This document shows, piece after piece, positions 3,057 to 19,276 of a stretch of DNA of 19,276 nucleotides (position 1 is the first letter of the stretch; each line of letters starts with the position of its first letter). Under the pieces are notes generated by a model. The model worked only from the letters and a program-made list of their open reading frames with translations, searched no databases and was not told the origin of the DNA. Source of the DNA: Octopus sinensis (lineage: Eukaryota); contig NW_021824216.1 of NCBI RefSeq assembly GCF_006345805.1, forward strand, positions 1-19,276, in the 5' to 3' direction. The translations under genes were made by a program, and so were the position numbers.

Positions 3057-3289
3057 AAGCGTAGCCAGGCTCATGGGCCCGGTTTCTCGGTTTCTATGGC
3101 ATGTGTGTTCCCCAGCTGGACGGGCGCCAGTCCATCGCAGCGTTACTCATTTTTGTCAGCTGAGTGGACTGAAGCAACGTGAAATGAAGTGTCTTGCTCA
3201 AGAACACAACGCGTCGCCAGGCCCAGGAATCGAAACCACAATCTTACGATCATGATGCTGACACCCTAACCACTAAGCCACGAGCCTCC
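3057..3289 (-). mobile_element. tRNA-derived SINE, type C head with tail variant 2
   Basis: Minus strand: GGCTCGTGGCTTAGTGGTTAGGG (A box) ... GGTTTCGATTCC (B box) ... GCGATGGACTGGCGCCCGTCCAG...AGAAACCG. By recall this domain resembles V/Meta-SINE-type cores (unverified). Flanked by TGTGTGTGTA at 3047-3056 and 3290-3299, a possible TSD within a microsatellite. Confidence 0.88.
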
Positions 3290-6913: not shown

Positions 6914-6968
6914 AAGTATTCCCAAACACACTCTCACACACACACACATAAAGATAGATGAACAGGTA

Positions 6969-7289
6969 GGTACTTAATTTATCGAAACCGAAAGGATGAA
7001 AAGCAAGGTCGACCGCGGCGGAATTTGAACTCAGAACGTAGCGACGGGCAAAATACCTATTTCTTTATTACCCACAAGGGGCTACACACAGACAGGACAA
7101 ACAAGGACAGACAAACGGATTAAGTCGGTTATATCGACCCCAGTGCGTAACTGGTACTTAATTTATCGACCCCGGAAGGATGAAAGGCAAAGTCGACCTC
7201 GGCAGAATTTGAACTCAGAACGTAGCGACGGGCAAAATACCGCTAAGTATTTCGCCGAGCGTGCTAACAATTCTGCCAGCTCGCCGCAT
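6969..7289 (-). mobile_element. SINE type A dimer (head + one 184-bp unit + partial second unit)
   Basis: Head GCGGCGAGCTGGCAGAATTGTTAG...GAGTTCAAATTC. ATACC junctions at 7053 and 7237 (period 184). The second unit is truncated at ~6969. Confidence 0.92.
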
Positions 7290-8961: not shown

Positions 8962-9119
8962 AAAGAGCCAACAACGTATTTCGACTTATATACATTTTTT
9001 GATATATAAAGAATAAATTTCCTTTATATGTAGGTCCCCTTAGGGCAATTGGCATGTAATGGAATTGAATTATTTATGTATAAAAACATGTATATAAGTC
9101 GAAACAAATTGTTGTCTTT
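8962..9119. repeat. ~158-bp imperfect foldback palindrome
   Basis: TTTCGACTTATATACAT (8979-8995) is the exact reverse complement of 9088-9104. Inner arms 9002-9030 and 9053-9081 match 22/29. Outer CAACAA/TTGTTG and AAAGA/TCTTT also pair. The 22-nt centre contains CCC-TTA-GGG. Confidence 0.8.
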
Positions 9120-9166
9120 TTCTTTTCTTTTTTTAATAATTGTTTGTTATAAAATAATAGTGGGAG

Positions 9167-9493
9167 ACCCCCCTTCTGTCTTGAATTACCATGGGATTGA
9201 ACCTAGAAAGTTACCCTCCCAGTTACAAGTCCGGGCAATGTCGTTTATGGAAGGCCAGCAGTCGCCCATGCATACCAGCCTCCCCTCTCCGCACCACCAA
9301 TGTTATCCAATGGAAAGGCAAAGGCCGATAGAGCTTGGCAACTGTGACATTCGCAACTCATTTCCACAGCTGAGTAAACTGGAGAAGCATGAAATAAAGT
9401 GTCTTGCTCAAAAACACAACACACAGCCCGGTCTAGGAATCGAACTCACAACTGTAAGCTCGACGCTCTAACTACTGAGCTATGCACCTTCAC
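9167..9493 (-). mobile_element. tRNA-derived SINE, type D, copy 1
   Basis: Minus head GTGAAGGTGCATAGCTCAGTAGTTAGAGCG...GAGTTCGATTCC. The post-head segment TGAGCAAGACACTTTATTTCA is shared with type C. The tail is homologous to 17361-17695. Confidence 0.88.
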
Positions 9494-10048: not shown

Positions 10049-10850
10049 CAGGGTGCGGTGAATAAACTGTCGTCTGAATTACGCAGAGAAGAAAATAACA
10101 CTGAAATCTCATTTTAACAGATATATTTATCATAATTACATAGAAATATCTTGAAATACTAAAGAGTAAATTGATTCAAAAATCGCCATTGGATTCAACC
10201 GCGGCCTCTATACGACTGCTGAATTTCCTGCAACTCTTCTGGACGATCTCCTTGTTTAAGTAGGTGAATGCTGCCATAATCTTTGCCTTCAGTTCATCTT
10301 TGTTATTACAAGGAGTTTTGTTGATCTCCCGCTCAACATCACCCTACGCATAATAAAAATTGGACCTTTCCTTTCTTGAATGAGGAATACCGAATATCTT
10401 CATAAACTACGTGCCTGACAAGAGACTGAGACACATCCATGTCCTTGGCTATGGACTAGATTGACTTGGAGGGATCGTTGTGAAACATGGCCTGGATCTC
10501 ACCAACAAATTGGAGAGTTATTTTCTCATCAGAACGATCAGAGTGAGTTTTCCGAGCTGTCAAACCTTGACAATACCCGTTAGACTCATCCAACTCTTTC
10601 CGAATCCTCTGCAGTGTCCTCAGTGAAACACTCTGAAATGTACGCATTCGAGCTTAAGGCGCATATACCAAGCAAGACAACATGTCGTTTCCAAATTTTT
10701 GACAGGGTGAATTGCGGCATGGTGCTGTTTTTCTCACAGACGGTGCCCGACTGATCTTACTACACCAGTAGTCGACAAAATCACAATCAAACAATGCGCA
10801 TGCACCAAATTAAATCTATAACATAGCGACAATTTACACATCGCACCCCA
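10049..10850 (-). mobile_element. Internally deleted Tc1/mariner transposon (maT/DD37D-like), 802 bp
   Basis: TA + CAGGGTGCGGTGAATAAACTGTCGTC (10049-74). The other TIR is degenerate at 10825-10850 (18 of the outer 24 positions match). A broken transposase lies on the minus strand. Subfamily assignment is inference. Confidence 0.88.
10175..10720 (-). pseudogene. Transposase pseudogene: N-terminal DNA-binding region fused to extreme C-terminus
   Basis: From ATG at 10720: MPQFTLSKIWKRHVVLLGI..., frameshift, LRTLQRIRKELDESNG...EIQAMFHNDPSKSI*SIAKDMDVSQSLVRHVVYEDIRY...QFL. After the junction near 10351-56: Y-A-*-GDVEREINKTPCNNKDELKAKIMAAF...SRIEAAVESNGDF. The catalytic triad region is absent. Confidence 0.85.
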
Positions 10851-12300: not shown

Positions 12301-12628
12301 AAGTAATTATCTAGACATTGTTGCATACTCACATATACATACATTTAACTTTAATTAAATGTGATTGACGCACTAATTCTTTGAGAATATGACTCTCTCG
12401 ATATACGTATATTCTGGACAACGATCAAGGTCGTGTACTCTTAACATGTTCTATTTATCGAATATTTAAACAAGATTGCGCTTACTAATTGGAGTGGCTC
12501 TGGTTTGTAAAGTCAACAATTGAGGAGAACTTATTGAACTTCGTCTGTGAAACATATCGTATTTAATCAGAAAGTCTAAGAATGATGAAAATATGAAGTC
12601 ATATTCATGTGCTTATATGTATGTATGT

Positions 12629-12856
12629 GGAAGGCGACGAGCTGGCAGAAACGTTAGCGAAATGCGTAGGCTATATTTCGTCTACCATTACCTTCTGGGT
12701 CCAAATTCCGCCGAGGTTGACTTTGCCTTTCATCTTTTCGAGGTCGATAAATTAAGTAACAGTTACGCACTGGGGTTGATGTAATCGACTTAATCCGTTT
12801 GTCTGTCCCTGTTTGGCCCCCTCTGTGTTTAGCTCTATGTGGGTAGTAAAGAAATA
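12629..12856 (+). mobile_element. SINE type A monomer with 15-bp TSD
   Basis: GCGACGAGCTGGCAGAAACGTTAG head, central GCCTTTCATCTTTTCGAGGTCGATAAATTAAGTA domain, tail ending AAAGAAATA. TATATGTATGTATGT occurs at 12614-28 and 12857-71. Confidence 0.93.
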
Positions 12857-13945
12857 TATATGTATGTATGTATGTGATTTGCGCGCACACACATGTGTTT
12901 ATGCTTGTGTGTGTGCTTGTTTGTGTGTAGGAATATCAACAAGATGGAGGTGAGTGATCGTTGAGGAACTGCGTTCTGTGTAATAAAATCGTGATCGAAA
13001 TTGTTACAATTGTTTCTTACGAAGAAGGGATTTCATAAACCTGTTCTCAACAGATTCATGGGCGACACATACATAGATTTATAGATTTATAGTATTTAGT
13101 TATTATATATTTTATTAAGAATGAAATTATTTACCGACTCTTAAGGTTGTTTTCATTCTATTCCAAAAGCCAGGAAATATATTATAAGACATAAATTGCT
13201 TCTCTTTATGAGATTATGACTAAGACCTCTTCCTCATTGCATTTGTCATTGTAATATGTATGTGAGTTTTGATTCTGCTATTTTGCCAATCCTTTGACCC
13301 CATAGGCCAACACGCAGGTCACAATGAACCAGAAATTTCCATGTTTAGATAAATTCATGAATCACAACAAAATAAAAAATGCACGAAGTAACCGAATTAC
13401 TGCACAAAATATTATTGATTTTGGTGGGGTTTTTTTGTCTGTTGTCATTACTCGGATTACAATTGCATTTTAATATACGCAGAATGAAGAGTTTATTTTT
13501 ACATTCGATTTGTTTATTCAAAATAGTATAACAGTTTCAATTTAGTTATTAGAAATTAGTTATTAGAAAACTGATGCTTTCTTTTTTTTTTGTATCTTCA
13601 AATGTGATATTACATTTGTAGAGAGAGAGAGTGAAAATTAATCAAACATTTACTAGGGTGCAGAAAAATGCTTAAGAACCACTGTTGAGAAGGGATTATT
13701 TACTGAGCAAACTAACAAAAGAAAAGTAGTCTCTGAATCCCACATTGGTTTAACTACAAGTCCACTCAAATTAGTTTACGCCATTATATTAGAAGCGCAG
13801 ACTCGTGTTAGAATATACTTTCTGAAATCTTAAATCTAATAACTTAAGCTATGACATAAATGGCAGATCAATATATTTTATCTAAGATTATAACGGTTCA
13901 ATAAGGCTAACTATAAACAGACATATTTGAATGTCGTAAAATATT

Positions 13946-14713
13946 CTTTTCCACTCTGGGCACAAGATACTAGATTTGAGGGGTGGGGAGCCAGTCGATT
14001 AGATCGACTCCAGTACGCAACTGGTACTTAATTTATGGACCAAGAAAGGATGGAAGGTAAAGTCTGCCACGGCGGAATTTGATCTCAGAACATAAATATA
14101 GACGAAATACCTATTTCTTTAGTACCCACAAGGGGCCAAGCACAGAGAAGACAAACAAGGACAGAGAAACGGATTAAGTCGAACATATCGACCCCAGTGC
14201 GTAACTGGTACTTATTTAATCGACCTCGAAAGGATGAAAGGCAAAGTCGACCACGATTGAATTTGAACTCAGAACGTAGCGGCAGACAAAATACCTATTT
14301 CTTTACTACCCACAAGGAGCTACACACAGAGAGGACAAACAAGGACAGACAAACGGATTGAGTCGATTACATCGATCCCAGTACGAAACTGGTACTTATT
14401 TAATCGACCCTGGAAGGATGAAAGACAAAGTCGACCTCGGCGGAATTTGAACTCAGAACGTAACGGGAAACAAAATACCTATTTCTTTATTACCCACAAG
14501 GGGCTAAACACAGAGGGGACAAACAAGGACAGACATAGGTATTAAGTCGATTACATCGACCCCAGTACGTAACTGGTACTTAATTTATCGACCCCGAAAG
14601 GATGAAAGGCAAAGTCGACCTCGGCGGAATTTGAACTCAGAATGTAACGGCAGACAAAATACCCCTAAGCATCTCACCCTGCGTGCTAAACGTTTCTGCC
14701 ACCTCGCCGCTCT
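13946..14713 (-). mobile_element. SINE type A multimer: head + three 184-bp units + terminal module with a different tail; 16-bp TSD
   Basis: ATACC junctions at 14107, 14291, 14475 and 14659. Head 14659-14713. Terminal module 13946-14106. AATGTCGTAAAATATT is identical at 13930-45 and 14714-29. Confidence 0.95.
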
Positions 14714-14930
14714 AATGTCGTAAAATATTGAATTTCATTCCGGTAAATTTTATTTTTTATCGTTAATTCAGTTTTATTATCATCTTGTTTGCATAAACGA
14801 TGTTAAAGGCGAGATATTTTAAAACGTTTATCTAACGAAATGCTTCAAAATATTTAATGGCAATGATAGCCTTCTGCAAGCTATATATTACCGAATAAAA
14901 ATGACTCTGTATGTGACGTAAATGCAGTCA

Positions 14931-16245: not shown

Positions 16246-16361
16246 AAGGCGAGCTAGCAGGAATGTTAGCACACTGGGCGAAACGCTTAGCGGTATTACG
16301 TCTGCCGTTACGTTCTGAGTTCAAATTCCGCCGCGGTCGACTTTGCCTTTCGTCCTTTCGG
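16246..16361 (+). mobile_element. SINE type A, 3'-truncated
   Basis: Head with A/B boxes (GAGTTCAAATTCC) and the start of the central domain GTCGACTTTGCCTTTCGTCCTTTCGG. Confidence 0.9.
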
Positions 16362-17231: not shown

Positions 17232-17360
17232 GTGTGTTTATGAACATACATATACGTGTTTCTTTGTGTGTGTGTGTGTACGTTTATGTTTGTATGTATG
17301 CATAAATGGATGGATCTAAGTAAAAAAATGTGAAATCATCTGATATTGAATTGTAAATAT

Positions 17361-17695
17361 TAGGAACACCTTCGGCTCATGAATGACCATAGGATTGCAC
17401 TTAGAAAGTTACCTTCGGAGGCACCAGTCTGAGAAGGGTTGTTTATGGAGTGTCAGCAGTCGCCCATGCATACTAGACTACCCTCTCCACAAGATTCGAT
17501 GTTATCCAAAGGAAAATGCAAAGACCGATACAACATGGTACCAGTGATATCGTAATTCATTTCTACAGAGCCGTGACCAGCAGCAATGTGAAATAATGTG
17601 TATTGCTAAAAAATACATCACTCAGACTCGTCCAGGAATCGAACTTACTACCACAGGATTATGTGCCCGACGGTCTAACCACTGAGACATTCGCC
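17361..17695 (-). mobile_element. tRNA-derived SINE, type D, copy 2, with 14-bp TSD
   Basis: Collinear with 9167-9493 (AGAAAGTTACC, GTTTATGGA, CAGCAGTCGCCCATGCATAC, GGAATCGAAC). TGAATTGTAAATAT occurs at 17347-60 and 17696-709. Confidence 0.88.
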
Positions 17696-17750
17696 TGAAT
17701 TGTAAATATAAACAGTGGTATCTCAGCTTGCGAAAGGAAAGCTGCACAGC

Positions 17751-17979
17751 AAGGTGTACTGGCAGAAACGTTAGCATCCCGAGCGAAATGCGTAGCCGTA
17801 TTTCGTCTGTCGTTACGTTCTGAGTTTAAATTCCGCCGAGGTCGACTTTGCCTTTCATCCTTTCTGGGTCGATAAATAAAGTACCAGTTTCGTACTGGCG
17901 TCTATGTAATCGACTTAATCCCTTTCTCTGTCCTTGTTTGTCCCCTCTATGTTTAGCCCCTTGTGGGTAGTAAAGAAAT
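17751..17979 (+). mobile_element. SINE type A monomer
   Basis: Full head, central domain and tail ending AGTAAAGAAAT. Confidence 0.92.
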
Positions 17980-18158
17980 GTGTATTAGAAGACAAGTTCA
18001 AAATATGTCCATCATTTTCACACACTTCGAAATGACAATGGGTTGTATTACACATATATCCATTAATTATTGTTTATTATTCTTTATTACTTCTTGACTT
18101 TTCTTTAATTAATTTGTCTTATCTTATCTCCACATCGAACATATATATATATATATAT

Positions 18159-18311
18159 ATTTCTTTACTACCCACAAGGGGCTAAACATAGAAGGGACAA
18201 ACAAGGACAGACAAACCGTGTAAGTCGATTACATCGACCCCAGTGCGTAACTGGTACTTATTTAATCGACCCCGAAAGGATGAAAGTCGAAGTCGGTGGA
18301 GTTTGAACTCA
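18159..18311 (-). mobile_element. SINE type A, 5'-truncated at the B box
   Basis: Tail and central domain match other type A copies; it ends at TTTGAACTCA and runs into (TA)n on the tail side. Confidence 0.9.
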
Positions 18312-18383: not shown

Positions 18384-18786
18384 TCTTTTACTTGTTTCAG
18401 TCATCTGACCGCGGCCATGCTGCTGCACAACCTTTAATCGAGCAACTCGACCCCGGGACTTATTCTTTTGTAAGCCCAGTGCTTATTCTATCGGTCTCTT
18501 TTGCCGAACCGCTAAGTAACGGGACATAAACACACCAGCATCGGTTGTCAAACAATGCTAGGGGGACAAACACAGACACACAAACACACACATGCATATA
18601 TATATATATATATACATATATACGACGGGCTTCTTTCAGTTTCCGTCTACCAAATCCACTCACAAGGCTTTGGTTGGCCCGAGGCTATAGTAGAAGACAC
18701 TTACCCAAGGTGCCACGCAGTGGGACTGAACCCGGAACCATGTGGTTGGTAAACAAGCGACTTACCACACAGCCACTCCTGCGCCT
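18384..18786 (-). mobile_element. tRNA-derived SINE, type B, full length with short internal microsatellite
   Basis: Minus: AGGCGCAGGAGTGGCTGTGTGG (A box), GGTTCAGTCCC (B box), CCTTGGGTAAGTGTCTTC (CORE-like by recall), ...GAAAGAAGCCCGTCG-(TA)n(TG)n, tail ending GACTGAAACAAGTAAAAGA. Confidence 0.93.
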
Positions 18787-19181: not shown

Positions 19182-19276
19182 AAGGCAGCGAGCTGACAGA
19201 AAAGTTAGCACGCCGGGCGAAAAGTTAAGCGTATTTATAGTCTGGCGTTACGTAGTGAGTTCAAATTCCGCCGAAG
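19182..19276 (+). mobile_element. SINE type A head, cut by the window end
   Basis: GAAGGCAGCGAGCTGACAGAAAAGTTAGCACGCCGGGCGAAA...GAGTTCAAATTCCGCCGAAG. Confidence 0.88.

What the first reader, a model, noticed from the sequence alone, without database searches (positions are those of the whole stretch)
13930..14729. Chimeric SINE multimer inside a single perfect 16-bp TSD
Seen: a 768-bp insert consisting of one A-box head, three exact 184-bp units (B box + centre + tail 1) and a terminal module with a different tail, flanked by identical AATGTCGTAAAATATT. The units are not clones. Hairpin loops read TACGC, TTCGT, TACGT and TGCGT (TTCGT also occurs in the monomer at 17751), and one unit has the block CATAGGTATT where the others have (C/G)AAACGGATT. 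Established: long TSDs mark target-primed reverse transcription by a LINE enzyme. Inference: one integration event copied several different SINE RNAs in series, priming on the tail-2 RNA and then jumping to the 3' ends of tail-1 RNAs at a fixed site. Alternatives are a pre-formed multimeric or circular template, or later unequal exchange. This could be an undescribed SINE concatemerisation system and a route from SINE to satellite.
Basis: partly seen in the sequence, partly recalled or inferred. Interest (0 to 1): 0.8.

Follow-up and report, generated by a model that had tools for sequence, protein, structure and literature searches.

The report
SINE multimer inside one target duplication
A short retrotransposon (SINE) sits here as a head plus four tandem, non-identical body copies bracketed by one perfect 16-bp target-site duplication; the structure is real, but the same architecture is already described in clams and reptiles, and how the copies were joined cannot be settled from this window.

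Summary
AATGTCGTAAAATATT occurs only twice in the window and brackets a 768-bp insert. Read on the minus strand, the insert has four parts:
- a 50-nt tRNA-like head;
- three complete units of exactly 184 nt, 10-14% different from each other;
- a 119-nt fourth unit, 16-22% from the others;
- a 47-nt different tail.

The unit runs from the apical loop of a 13-bp anticodon-like hairpin to the exact last base of the SINE (...AAAGAAATA). That landmark-to-landmark junction points to reverse-transcriptase template switching, not random DNA breakage.

The junction is not unique to this locus. A dimer at 6963-7287 carries the identical junction. All five tail-1 multimer units share a C-to-T change (TATTTTG) that none of four monomers has (Fisher p = 0.008).

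I therefore favour one integration of a template from an existing multimer lineage (0.42). In-situ expansion gets 0.15.

It is not an undescribed system. TSD-(SINE)n-TSD arrays with head-truncated inner units are published for a clam, and SINE-derived satellites for squamates.

No related sequence could be retrieved from outside the window, so genome-wide tests remain undone. Interest is moderate.

The parts
13930..13945 (.). Left copy of the 16-bp target-site duplication AATGTCGTAAAATATT. It lies next to the SINE 3' end. Its last 4 nt (sense AATA) may be microhomology with the RNA 3' end.
   Evidence: Exact, and only two copies in the window.
13946..13992 (-). Tail 2, the 47-nt 3' module of the last unit: ...CCCCTCAAATCTAGTATCTTGTGCCCAGAGTGGAAAAG. 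It has no other copy in the window.
   Evidence: blastn-short and fuzzy k-mer search find no other copy. Weak collinear similarity to the last 38 nt of tail 1, shuffle p = 0.016.
13993..14111 (-). U4: 119 nt homologous to unit positions 1-119. It is the most divergent unit and keeps TATTTCG.
   Evidence: Alignment and distances: 16-22% from the other units, 15.1% from the consensus.
14112..14295 (-). U3: complete 184-nt unit, from the 3' side of the anticodon-like loop through the B-box-like motif and two small hairpins to tail 1, ending ...AAAGAAATA.
   Evidence: 9.8% from the consensus of copies outside the insert.
14296..14479 (-). U2: complete 184-nt unit. It shares the linked TTAAATAAG variant with U3 and with the dispersed copy at 18137-18295.
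14480..14663 (-). U1: complete 184-nt unit and the closest to the family consensus (3.8%). It carries a 3-substitution block (14535-14543) that makes a 9-nt inverted copy of the junction motif.
14664..14713 (-). Head: the 5' 50 nt, holding the acceptor-like and D-like arms with the A-box-like TGGCAGAAACG, and the 5' arm and loop of the long anticodon-like hairpin.
   Evidence: Alignment of six heads. RNAalifold gives a cloverleaf-like consensus. No Rfam or default ARAGORN tRNA call.
14714..14729 (.). Right copy of the 16-bp target-site duplication. It lies next to the SINE 5' end.
6963..7287 (-). Second multimer of the same family: head, a complete 184-nt unit, and about 95 nt of a second unit. 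It has the identical junction GAAATA|GGTATTTTG. No TSD is detectable, and it runs into a microsatellite.
12630..12856 (+). Reference monomer. It is flanked by the 16-bp TSD TATATGTATGTATGTG (12614-12629, and 12857 onward). This fixes the SINE 3' terminus at ...AAAGAAATA with no simple-repeat tail.
17751..17986 (+). Reference monomer, with TATTTCG and hairpin loop TTCGT.

Best explanation
The insert is one retrotransposition product of a tRNA-like, tail-less SINE. It was integrated by target-primed reverse transcription that started at the tail-2 end and finished at the true SINE 5' end.

The 184-nt repeat is a defined piece of the SINE RNA. It runs from the 3' side of the apical loop of the anticodon-like hairpin to the very last base of the SINE. 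Because both ends are RNA landmarks, the junction was most probably first made by a reverse transcriptase. The enzyme left one SINE RNA in that loop and resumed on the 3' end of another.

That junction is inherited, not new here. It defines a multimer lineage in this genome, marked by the identical junction and a shared C-to-T change just after it. The array was therefore most likely copied from one or more multimer-derived templates that already held diverged units. The last unit belongs to a divergent subfamily with its own tail.

Shown: the anatomy, the TSD, the heterogeneity of the units, the recurrence of the junction, and the position of the junction. Inferred: the RT origin of the junction, the single integration, and that the template was already multimeric.
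For: - A perfect 16-bp TSD surrounds the whole array.
- The 5' end coincides with the family 5' end.
- Monomer c12674, with its own 16-bp TSD, shows that the SINE ends exactly at AAAGAAATA. That is exactly where each unit ends.
- The unit starts at the 3' side of the loop of a 13-bp hairpin in a cloverleaf-like consensus fold.
- The junction is identical at 3 of 3 junctions here and at 1 of 1 in the 6963-7287 dimer.
- TATTTTG is present in 5 of 5 tail-1 multimer units and 0 of 4 monomers, Fisher p = 0.008. Each unit keeps about 10 of its 11 other CpGs, so independent decay at this one site is unlikely.
- U1 is only 3.8% from the consensus, while U2, U3 and U4 are 8.2, 9.8 and 15.1% away. The relative-rate test for U1 against U3 gives p = 0.007-0.04. 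Most divergence between units therefore predates integration, which agrees with the intact TSD.
- Three TSDs in the window all begin (A)ATAT next to the element's 3' end on the sense strand. This supports the orientation and TPRT priming.
Against: - The sense strand has three TTTT runs, at positions 55, 239 and 423. These are potential RNA polymerase III terminators, so a 768-nt pol III transcript of a pre-formed array would be inefficient.
- The two units of the 6963-7287 dimer share four private changes. Units are therefore still being generated or homogenised within lineages, not simply inherited position by position.
- Only two multimers and four or five monomers are available.
- The consensus is built from about ten sequences.
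- No source locus, no empty site and no other tail-2 copy could be examined, because every search outside the window was empty.
Confidence: 0.42

Rival explanations
1. One reading: the array was assembled de novo during this one integration. Reverse transcription primed on a tail-2 SINE RNA and ran to the anticodon-like loop. It then jumped end-to-end onto the 3' terminus of a tail-1 SINE RNA, did so three times, and copied the last RNA to its 5' end.

The fixed donor site would be explained if the SINE RNAs are cleaved, or the RT stalls, in the apical loop.
For: - The unit is exactly 'loop to RNA 3' terminus'.
- The units are heterogeneous and mosaic with dispersed copies. U2 and U3 share a linked variant with c18137, and U2 shares the loop TTCGT with c17760.
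- Relative rates are unequal.
- The terminal unit belongs to a different subfamily.
- There is a single perfect TSD.
- The family has no simple-repeat tail, so a clean junction is possible.
Against: - Four of four junctions are identical to the base, with no untemplated nucleotides.
- The same junction occurs in an older, independent locus whose two units are sisters.
- The association of TATTTTG with multimer units (p = 0.008) needs an extra assumption, for instance that the variant promotes cleavage or switching.
- RNAs ending exactly at the SINE terminus are not expected from pol III, which stops in flanking DNA.
Confidence: 0.25
2. A shorter chimeric element, at least head, one tail-1 unit and the tail-2 unit, was inserted. 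It was then expanded in place by unequal sister-chromatid or homologous exchange. Gene conversion from dispersed copies added the heterogeneity.
For: - This is the standard explanation in the literature for SINE tandem arrays (PMC11481361, PMC10702118).
- All units are exactly 184 nt, in register and without indels.
- The units of the 6963-7287 dimer are sisters.
- An intact 16-bp TSD is still expected 9-19% of the time at 10-14% divergence.
Against: - U1 is 3.8% from the consensus while U3 is 9.8% (relative-rate p = 0.007-0.04). That is not expected for in-situ sisters.
- No substitution is private to the array's units.
- The linked variant shared by U2 and U3 with a dispersed copy would need conversion.
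- It still needs a prior RT-type event to make the first chimeric junction at two RNA landmarks.
Confidence: 0.15
3. Serial nested insertions. An old tail-2 SINE was hit repeatedly at the same site in its head by new SINE copies. Their 5' ends were resolved by annealing to the resident homologous sequence, adding one unit at the 5' side each time.
For: - Divergence from the consensus rises monotonically from 5' to 3': 3.8, 8.2, 9.8 and 15.1%. This model predicts that gradient.
- The site TATTT is AT-rich, like the (A)ATAT starts of the three TSDs.
Against: - The outer TSD would then be as old as U3 and U4, and the chance of 32 unchanged bases at about 10% divergence is roughly 0.04.
- There are no internal TSDs or tails.
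- A monotonic order of four values is weak evidence, and U4's distance may reflect its subfamily rather than its age.
Confidence: 0.06
4. Assembly artefact: a mis-joined or mis-counted tandem array.
For: Tandem repeats are prone to collapse or expansion in assemblies.
Against: The units differ by 10-22% with unit-specific substitutions throughout. The flanks are unique, and the TSD is exact.
Confidence: 0.02

Closest known systems
TSD1-(SINE)n-TSD1 tandem SINE arrays in the blood clam Scapharca broughtonii (Martelossi et al. 2024, Mob DNA, PMC11481361, Fig. 5E)
   Same: One TSD pair surrounds the array. The first element has a complete tRNA-related head, the inner units share one head truncation, and the last unit carries a complete tail. 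It is also a tRNA-related SINE. Whether this window is molluscan is only a lead.
   Different: In the clam, the first and inner units are also truncated in the 3' tail, and the units are described as members of one family. Here the inner units keep the complete 3' terminus, the units are 10-22% diverged, and the last unit has a different tail. The clam paper suggests unequal recombination and reports no landmark-to-landmark junction.
SINE-derived satellites (sSat) of squamate reptiles (Vassetzky et al. 2023, Mob DNA, PMC10702118)
   Same: The tandem repeats are made of a portion of a SINE. Terminal units extend to the SINE terminus, and minor variants have both termini. Short loci have variable units.
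   Different: sSats reach up to 1000 units, become homogenised and favour subtelomeres. That paper's text has no occurrence of 'TSD' or 'target site'. Here there are 3.6 units, no homogenisation, and a clear TSD.
Chimeric retrocopies made by LINE reverse-transcriptase template switching (U6/L1-type chimeras). This comparison rests on my own knowledge of the L1 literature; a related preprint, 10.1101/2025.02.02.635956, appeared in the results but I did not read it.
   Same: A single TSD surrounds a chimera. The upstream partner is full length from its 5' end, and it is joined at its exact 3' terminus to a 5'-truncated downstream partner.
   Different: In those chimeras the truncation point of the downstream partner varies, and the 3' end is poly(A). 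Here the donor site is fixed, the partners are all the same SINE, there are up to four of them, and there is no poly(A).
Complex (dimeric or multimeric) SINEs amplified from multimeric masters, such as Alu, and the head-to-tail SINE multimers of rodents (PMC3531059, PMC8466645)
   Same: Units of SINE origin are joined head to tail and propagate as one element. The same junction occurs at independent loci.
   Different: Those use complete or nearly complete monomers, each with a promoter, and often an A-rich linker. Here the inner units lack the A-box half of the head, and potential pol III terminators lie inside the element.

Membership tests
tRNA-derived SINE (non-autonomous non-LTR retrotransposon) | Short (<1 kb), interspersed, present in multiple copies | tested here: met
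   Seven copies or fragments in 19 kb, on both strands.
tRNA-derived SINE (non-autonomous non-LTR retrotransposon) | Head derived from tRNA, with internal pol III A and B boxes | tested here: inconclusive
   The B-box-like GAGTTCAAATTCC is conserved in all copies, and RNAalifold gives a cloverleaf-like consensus. However, the A box is only 5 of 8 specified positions. Rfam tRNA and default ARAGORN are negative. ARAGORN at -ps70 with an intron allowed gives only a weak tRNA-Arg call.
tRNA-derived SINE (non-autonomous non-LTR retrotransposon) | Target-site duplications of LINE type | tested here: met
   16-bp TSDs flank the insert and monomer c12674. An unrelated SINE at 17361-17695 has a 14-bp TSD.
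tRNA-derived SINE (non-autonomous non-LTR retrotransposon) | 3' region shared with a partner LINE | not testable with these tools
   No LINE is present in the window, and no genome of this organism is in the collections.
TSD-bounded SINE multimer (TSD1-(SINE)n-TSD1, PMC11481361) | A single TSD pair around the whole array, with none between units | tested here: met
TSD-bounded SINE multimer (TSD1-(SINE)n-TSD1, PMC11481361) | First unit has a complete head; later units share one head truncation | tested here: met
   All of U1-U4 start at GGTATTT; only the 5' end has positions 1-50.
TSD-bounded SINE multimer (TSD1-(SINE)n-TSD1, PMC11481361) | First and inner units truncated in the 3' tail; only the last unit has a complete tail | tested here: not met
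   U1-U3 end at the exact SINE terminus AAAGAAATA, as defined by the TSD of c12674. The last unit has a complete but different tail.
SINE-derived satellite (sSat, PMC10702118) | Tandem repeats of a SINE portion, with terminal units reaching the SINE termini | tested here: met
SINE-derived satellite (sSat, PMC10702118) | Many or long loci with homogenised units | tested here: not met
   Two loci, of 3.6 and 1.5 units. The units are 10-22% diverged. Genome-wide abundance is not testable.
RT template-switch chimera (U6/L1 type) | One TSD; the upstream partner is full length and joined at its exact 3' end | tested here: met
RT template-switch chimera (U6/L1 type) | Independent events, so junction positions and sequences vary between loci | tested here: not met
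   Four of four junctions are identical across two loci.
Complex SINE amplified from a multimeric master (Alu-like) | The same junction at independent loci | tested here: met
   The insert and 6963-7287.
Complex SINE amplified from a multimeric master (Alu-like) | Units at the same ordinal position are orthologous between loci | tested here: inconclusive
   The units of c6969 share four private changes with each other, not with the insert's U1 or U2. But c6969_U1 is also among the nearest relatives of U1 and U3. There are too few loci to decide.
Complex SINE amplified from a multimeric master (Alu-like) | Transcribable as a whole from the head promoter, with no internal terminator | tested here: not met
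   Three TTTT runs on the sense strand, at positions 55, 239 and 423. Their strength as terminators in this organism is unknown.

The most novel reading that the evidence does not exclude
A self-propagating, RT-driven concatemerisation of SINE RNA.

- SINE RNAs are broken, or RT stalls, in the apical loop of the anticodon-like hairpin. This would be the equivalent of a tRNA half.
- RT reaching that point switches to the 3' end of another SINE RNA.
- Once a junction carrying TATTTT exists, pol III transcripts that end at the next unit's T-run finish in GGUAUUUU-3'. That matches the internal switch site, so further switches become homology-guided and reproduce the junction exactly.
- Each integration could then stitch units from different loci and different tail subfamilies into arrays. 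That would give a direct RNA-level route from SINE to satellite.
Probability: 0.22. Interest if true: 0.65.

Novelty: new member of a known kind. Interest (0 to 1): 0.4.

Why it matters
How dispersed SINEs become tandem satellites is still explained mainly by unequal recombination. This locus is a clean, TSD-delimited case. Both ends of the repeat unit coincide with RNA landmarks: the hairpin loop and the exact RNA 3' terminus. The units are also too different to be recent in-situ duplicates.

If a genome-wide census confirms that pattern, the first step of satellite birth would move to reverse transcription. It would also tie that step to a tRNA-like structural feature. As a single locus it is an instructive example of a published architecture, not a new system.

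Tried and rejected
**Searches outside the window, all empty**
- A protein search with a 92-aa antisense reading frame spanning two junctions.
- Exact-pattern DNA scans of viral, metagenome (junction pattern, then general pattern) and prokaryote genome collections.
- Exact-product look-ups of two window ORFs.

**Attempt to reach the same genome through a transposon remnant**
- A decayed transposon-like ORF pair at 10179-10653 gave four ENA proteins at 62-67% identity.
- Two 20-kb loci of assembly ERZ21867824 were fetched. They hold no copy of this SINE, so they come from a different organism and were dropped.

**RNA and tRNA searches**
- An Rfam scan of the whole window gave only microsatellite-driven miRNA look-alikes.
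- Rfam on two head regions gave nothing relevant.
- ARAGORN finds no tRNA at default settings.

**Other searches**
- A literature search for the SINE sequence string found nothing.
- Pfam on the ORF fragments found nothing.
- No TSDs were found for the copies at 6963-7287, 17751-17986, 18137-18295 or 16248-16361.

**Ideas rejected**
- That the junctions lack an expected simple-repeat tail. I first counted this against template jumping. It fell when c12674's (TATG)n turned out to be its TSD, which shows the family is tail-less.
- That the two multimers share a distinct head 5' variant. The alignment does not support it.
- That tail 2 matches the other SINE family at 17361-17695. Only two non-collinear 8-mers match.
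Full report
**What is there**

The window is AT-rich eukaryotic DNA packed with microsatellites: 51 Tandem Repeats Finder rows and GC of 0.22-0.44.

AATGTCGTAAAATATT occurs exactly twice, at 13930-13945 and 14714-14729. Among non-low-complexity direct repeats of 14 nt or more within 1.5 kb, it is the only 16-mer that abuts the ends of a repeat element.

The 768 bp between the two copies is a period-184 array of 3.6 copies, with 85% matches and no indels.
- head 14713..14664;
- U1 14663..14480, U2 14479..14296, U3 14295..14112, each exactly 184 nt;
- U4 14111..13993 (119 nt);
- a 47-nt tail 13992..13946 with no other copy in the window.

**The family and its orientation**

BLAST of the insert against the window finds six more copies:
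- a second multimer at 6963-7287 (minus strand);
- monomers at 17751-17986 (plus) and 12630-12856 (plus);
- a copy at 18137-18295 (minus) that lacks the head;
- a copy at 16248-16361 (plus) that lacks the 3' half;
- a copy cut by the window end at 19185.

The sense strand was assigned from several observations:
- a conserved B-box-like GAGTTCAAATTCC;
- a weaker A-box-like TGGCAGAAACG;
- a cloverleaf-like RNAalifold consensus of six heads, with acceptor-like, D-like and T-like arms and a 13-bp anticodon-like arm (single-sequence fold z = -2.2);
- three independent TSDs (this insert, c12674, and an unrelated SINE at 17361-17695) that all begin (A)ATAT next to the element's 3' end.

Membership in 'tRNA-derived' is only partly demonstrated. 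Rfam and default ARAGORN call no tRNA. ARAGORN at a relaxed threshold gives a weak tRNA-Arg.

From memory, tRNA-Arg-derived SINEs were described in octopus (Ohshima and Okada 1994, cited in PMC3531059). That is a lead, not a result. The organism was not identified.

**Where the unit begins and ends**

Monomer c12674 is bracketed by a 16-bp TSD, TATATGTATGTATGTG. It ends exactly at ...GTAAAGAAATA. The family therefore has no simple-repeat tail, and AAAGAAATA is the true 3' terminus.

Every multimer unit ends on that same base. Every unit starts at GGTATTT, the first bases 3' of the apical loop (TTAGC) of the long anticodon-like hairpin.

The repeat is therefore 'loop to RNA 3' end'. A random DNA breakpoint would hit the terminus within 1-2 nt only about 1-2% of the time. 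An event that knows the RNA ends, namely reverse-transcriptase template switching, is the natural origin of the junction. This step is an inference.

**Are the units clones?**

They are not. U1-U3 differ by 10-14%, and U4 differs from them by 16-22%.

- U1 is as close to the dispersed copies c6969_U1 and c17760 (16 differences each) as to U2 (18 differences).
- U2 and U3 share a linked two-position variant (TTAAATAAG) with the dispersed copy at 18137-18295.
- U2 shares the loop TTCGT with c17760.
- No substitution is private to this array.

Distance from a consensus built without the insert is 3.8% for U1, 8.2% for U2, 9.8% for U3 and 15.1% for U4. Tajima relative-rate tests of U1 against U3 give p = 0.007-0.04 with two outgroups and p = 0.027 with the consensus.

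U1 bounds the time since insertion at about 3-4% divergence. Most of the difference between units therefore predates integration, which agrees with the intact TSD. On its own the TSD is weak evidence: 16 identical bases are still expected 9-19% of the time at 10-14% divergence.

**The terminal module**

The 47-nt tail aligns collinearly, but weakly, with the last 38 nt of tail 1, sharing CCCCTC..TAG..CTTGTG..G.GT.G.AAAGAA (shuffle p = 0.016).

If the first four bases of the TSD are counted, the tail ends GGAAAAGAATA, against GTAAAGAAATA for tail 1. That suggests a complete unit of a divergent subfamily, primed with 4 nt of microhomology, rather than a truncated unit plus foreign DNA.

An in-situ origin from a single monomer is therefore excluded. 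At least a chimeric dimer must have been inserted.

**Evidence that the junction is inherited**

- The multimer at 6963-7287 has the identical junction, AAAGAAATA|GGTATTTTG. All four junctions in the window agree to the base.
- All five tail-1 multimer units read TATTTTG. The four monomers read TATTTCG, TATTTCG, TATTACG and TATTTAT (Fisher p = 0.008).
- Each unit keeps about 10 of its 11 other CpGs, so five independent decays at this one CpG are unlikely.

The templates were thus drawn from a multimer-associated lineage, not from monomer RNAs at random.

Two observations complicate this. First, the two units of the 6963-7287 dimer share four private changes (GCCCGTCGC), so unit generation or homogenisation continues within lineages. 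Second, TATTTTG creates TTTT runs at sense positions 55, 239 and 423. These may terminate pol III; PMC8466645 reports TAT(3+) terminators in mammalian SINEs. That argues against efficient transcription of a long pre-formed array.

**Weighing the models**

- **Single integration of an inherited multimer-lineage template: 0.42.**
It explains the landmarks and the heterogeneity. It needs extra assumptions for the invariant junction and for the T-variant association.
- **In-situ expansion of an inserted chimeric dimer: 0.15.**
- **Serial nested insertion: 0.06.** It predicts the observed 5'-to-3' divergence gradient, but fits poorly with an intact TSD.
- **Assembly artefact: 0.02.**

A hybrid remains open and is given as the novel case. 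In it, copy-choice or homology-guided switching uses the GGUAUUUU ends of transcripts terminated at the next unit.

**Comparison with what is known**

The architecture is published.
- Squamate SINE-derived satellites are tandem SINE portions with terminal units that reach the SINE ends (PMC10702118).
- Tandem SINE arrays are also reported in potato and in rodents.

Both of the first two papers invoke unequal recombination.

This locus differs in three ways. The inner units keep the exact 3' terminus. The units are strongly heterogeneous. The last unit has another tail.

It is a new member of a known kind, and its details bear on mechanism. It is not an undescribed system.

**Limits**

No sequence from the same organism outside the window could be obtained. 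The unit phylogeny, the tail-2 census and the orthologous-site tests that would decide between the models could not be run.

Noticed in passing
window 17361-17695 (minus strand), TSDs 17347-17360 and 17696-17709: An unrelated SINE of about 335 bp. It has a clearer tRNA-like head (GGCGAATGTCTCAGTGGTTAGACC...GTTCGATTCC), no A-tail, and a perfect 14-bp TSD, TGAATTGTAAATAT. It lies directly upstream of the monomer at 17751.
   Followed up: partly
window 14474-14482 and 14535-14543: The three clustered substitutions that make U1's odd block (plus strand ATAGGTATT) create a perfect 9-nt inverted copy of the junction motif (plus strand AATACCTAT) 52 nt away. The predicted fold of the array pairs the two. 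This looks like a templated, template-switch type mutation rather than three independent changes.
   Followed up: partly
window 13930-13945, 12614-12629 / 12857-12876, 17347-17360: On the element's sense strand, all three clear TSDs start with (A)ATAT directly after the element's 3' end. This suggests a shared nick-site preference, or microhomology priming with a 3'-terminal ...AAUA.
   Followed up: partly
window 16248-16361 (plus strand): A copy of the same SINE leaves the family alignment after about 115 nt, at ...CCTTTCGG. It continues with unrelated A-rich sequence (AAACGTAACTGAAAGATGAAAACTCCAGATGAAAATA). It could be a deletion or a third tail variant. No TSD was found.
   Followed up: no
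window 17751-17986 (+) and 18137-18295 (-): Two copies of the SINE lie tail to tail, about 150 bp apart, forming a long inverted repeat.
   Followed up: no
window 10179-10653 (minus strand): Two open stretches (65 and 55 aa) look like a decayed transposon-type gene. The only relatives found are four unnamed short ENA proteins at 62-67% identity from assembly ERZ21867824. There was no Pfam match.
   Followed up: partly
window about 3058-3252 and 9034-9468 (plus-strand ORFs): Translated stretches ...KCLAQEHNASPGPGIETT... and ...KCLAQKHNTQPGLGIELTT... recur. They probably mark the antisense strand of yet another tRNA-like SINE family. Similar recurring motifs (...GLNPEPCGW / ...GTEPKPCGW) occur at 192-368 and 18516-18749.
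   Followed up: no
whole window: Microsatellite load is very high, with (TA)n, (TG)n, (TATC)n, (TCTA)n and (ATT)n arrays up to about 440 bp. These arrays produced all 116 Rfam 'miRNA' look-alike hits.
   Followed up: no
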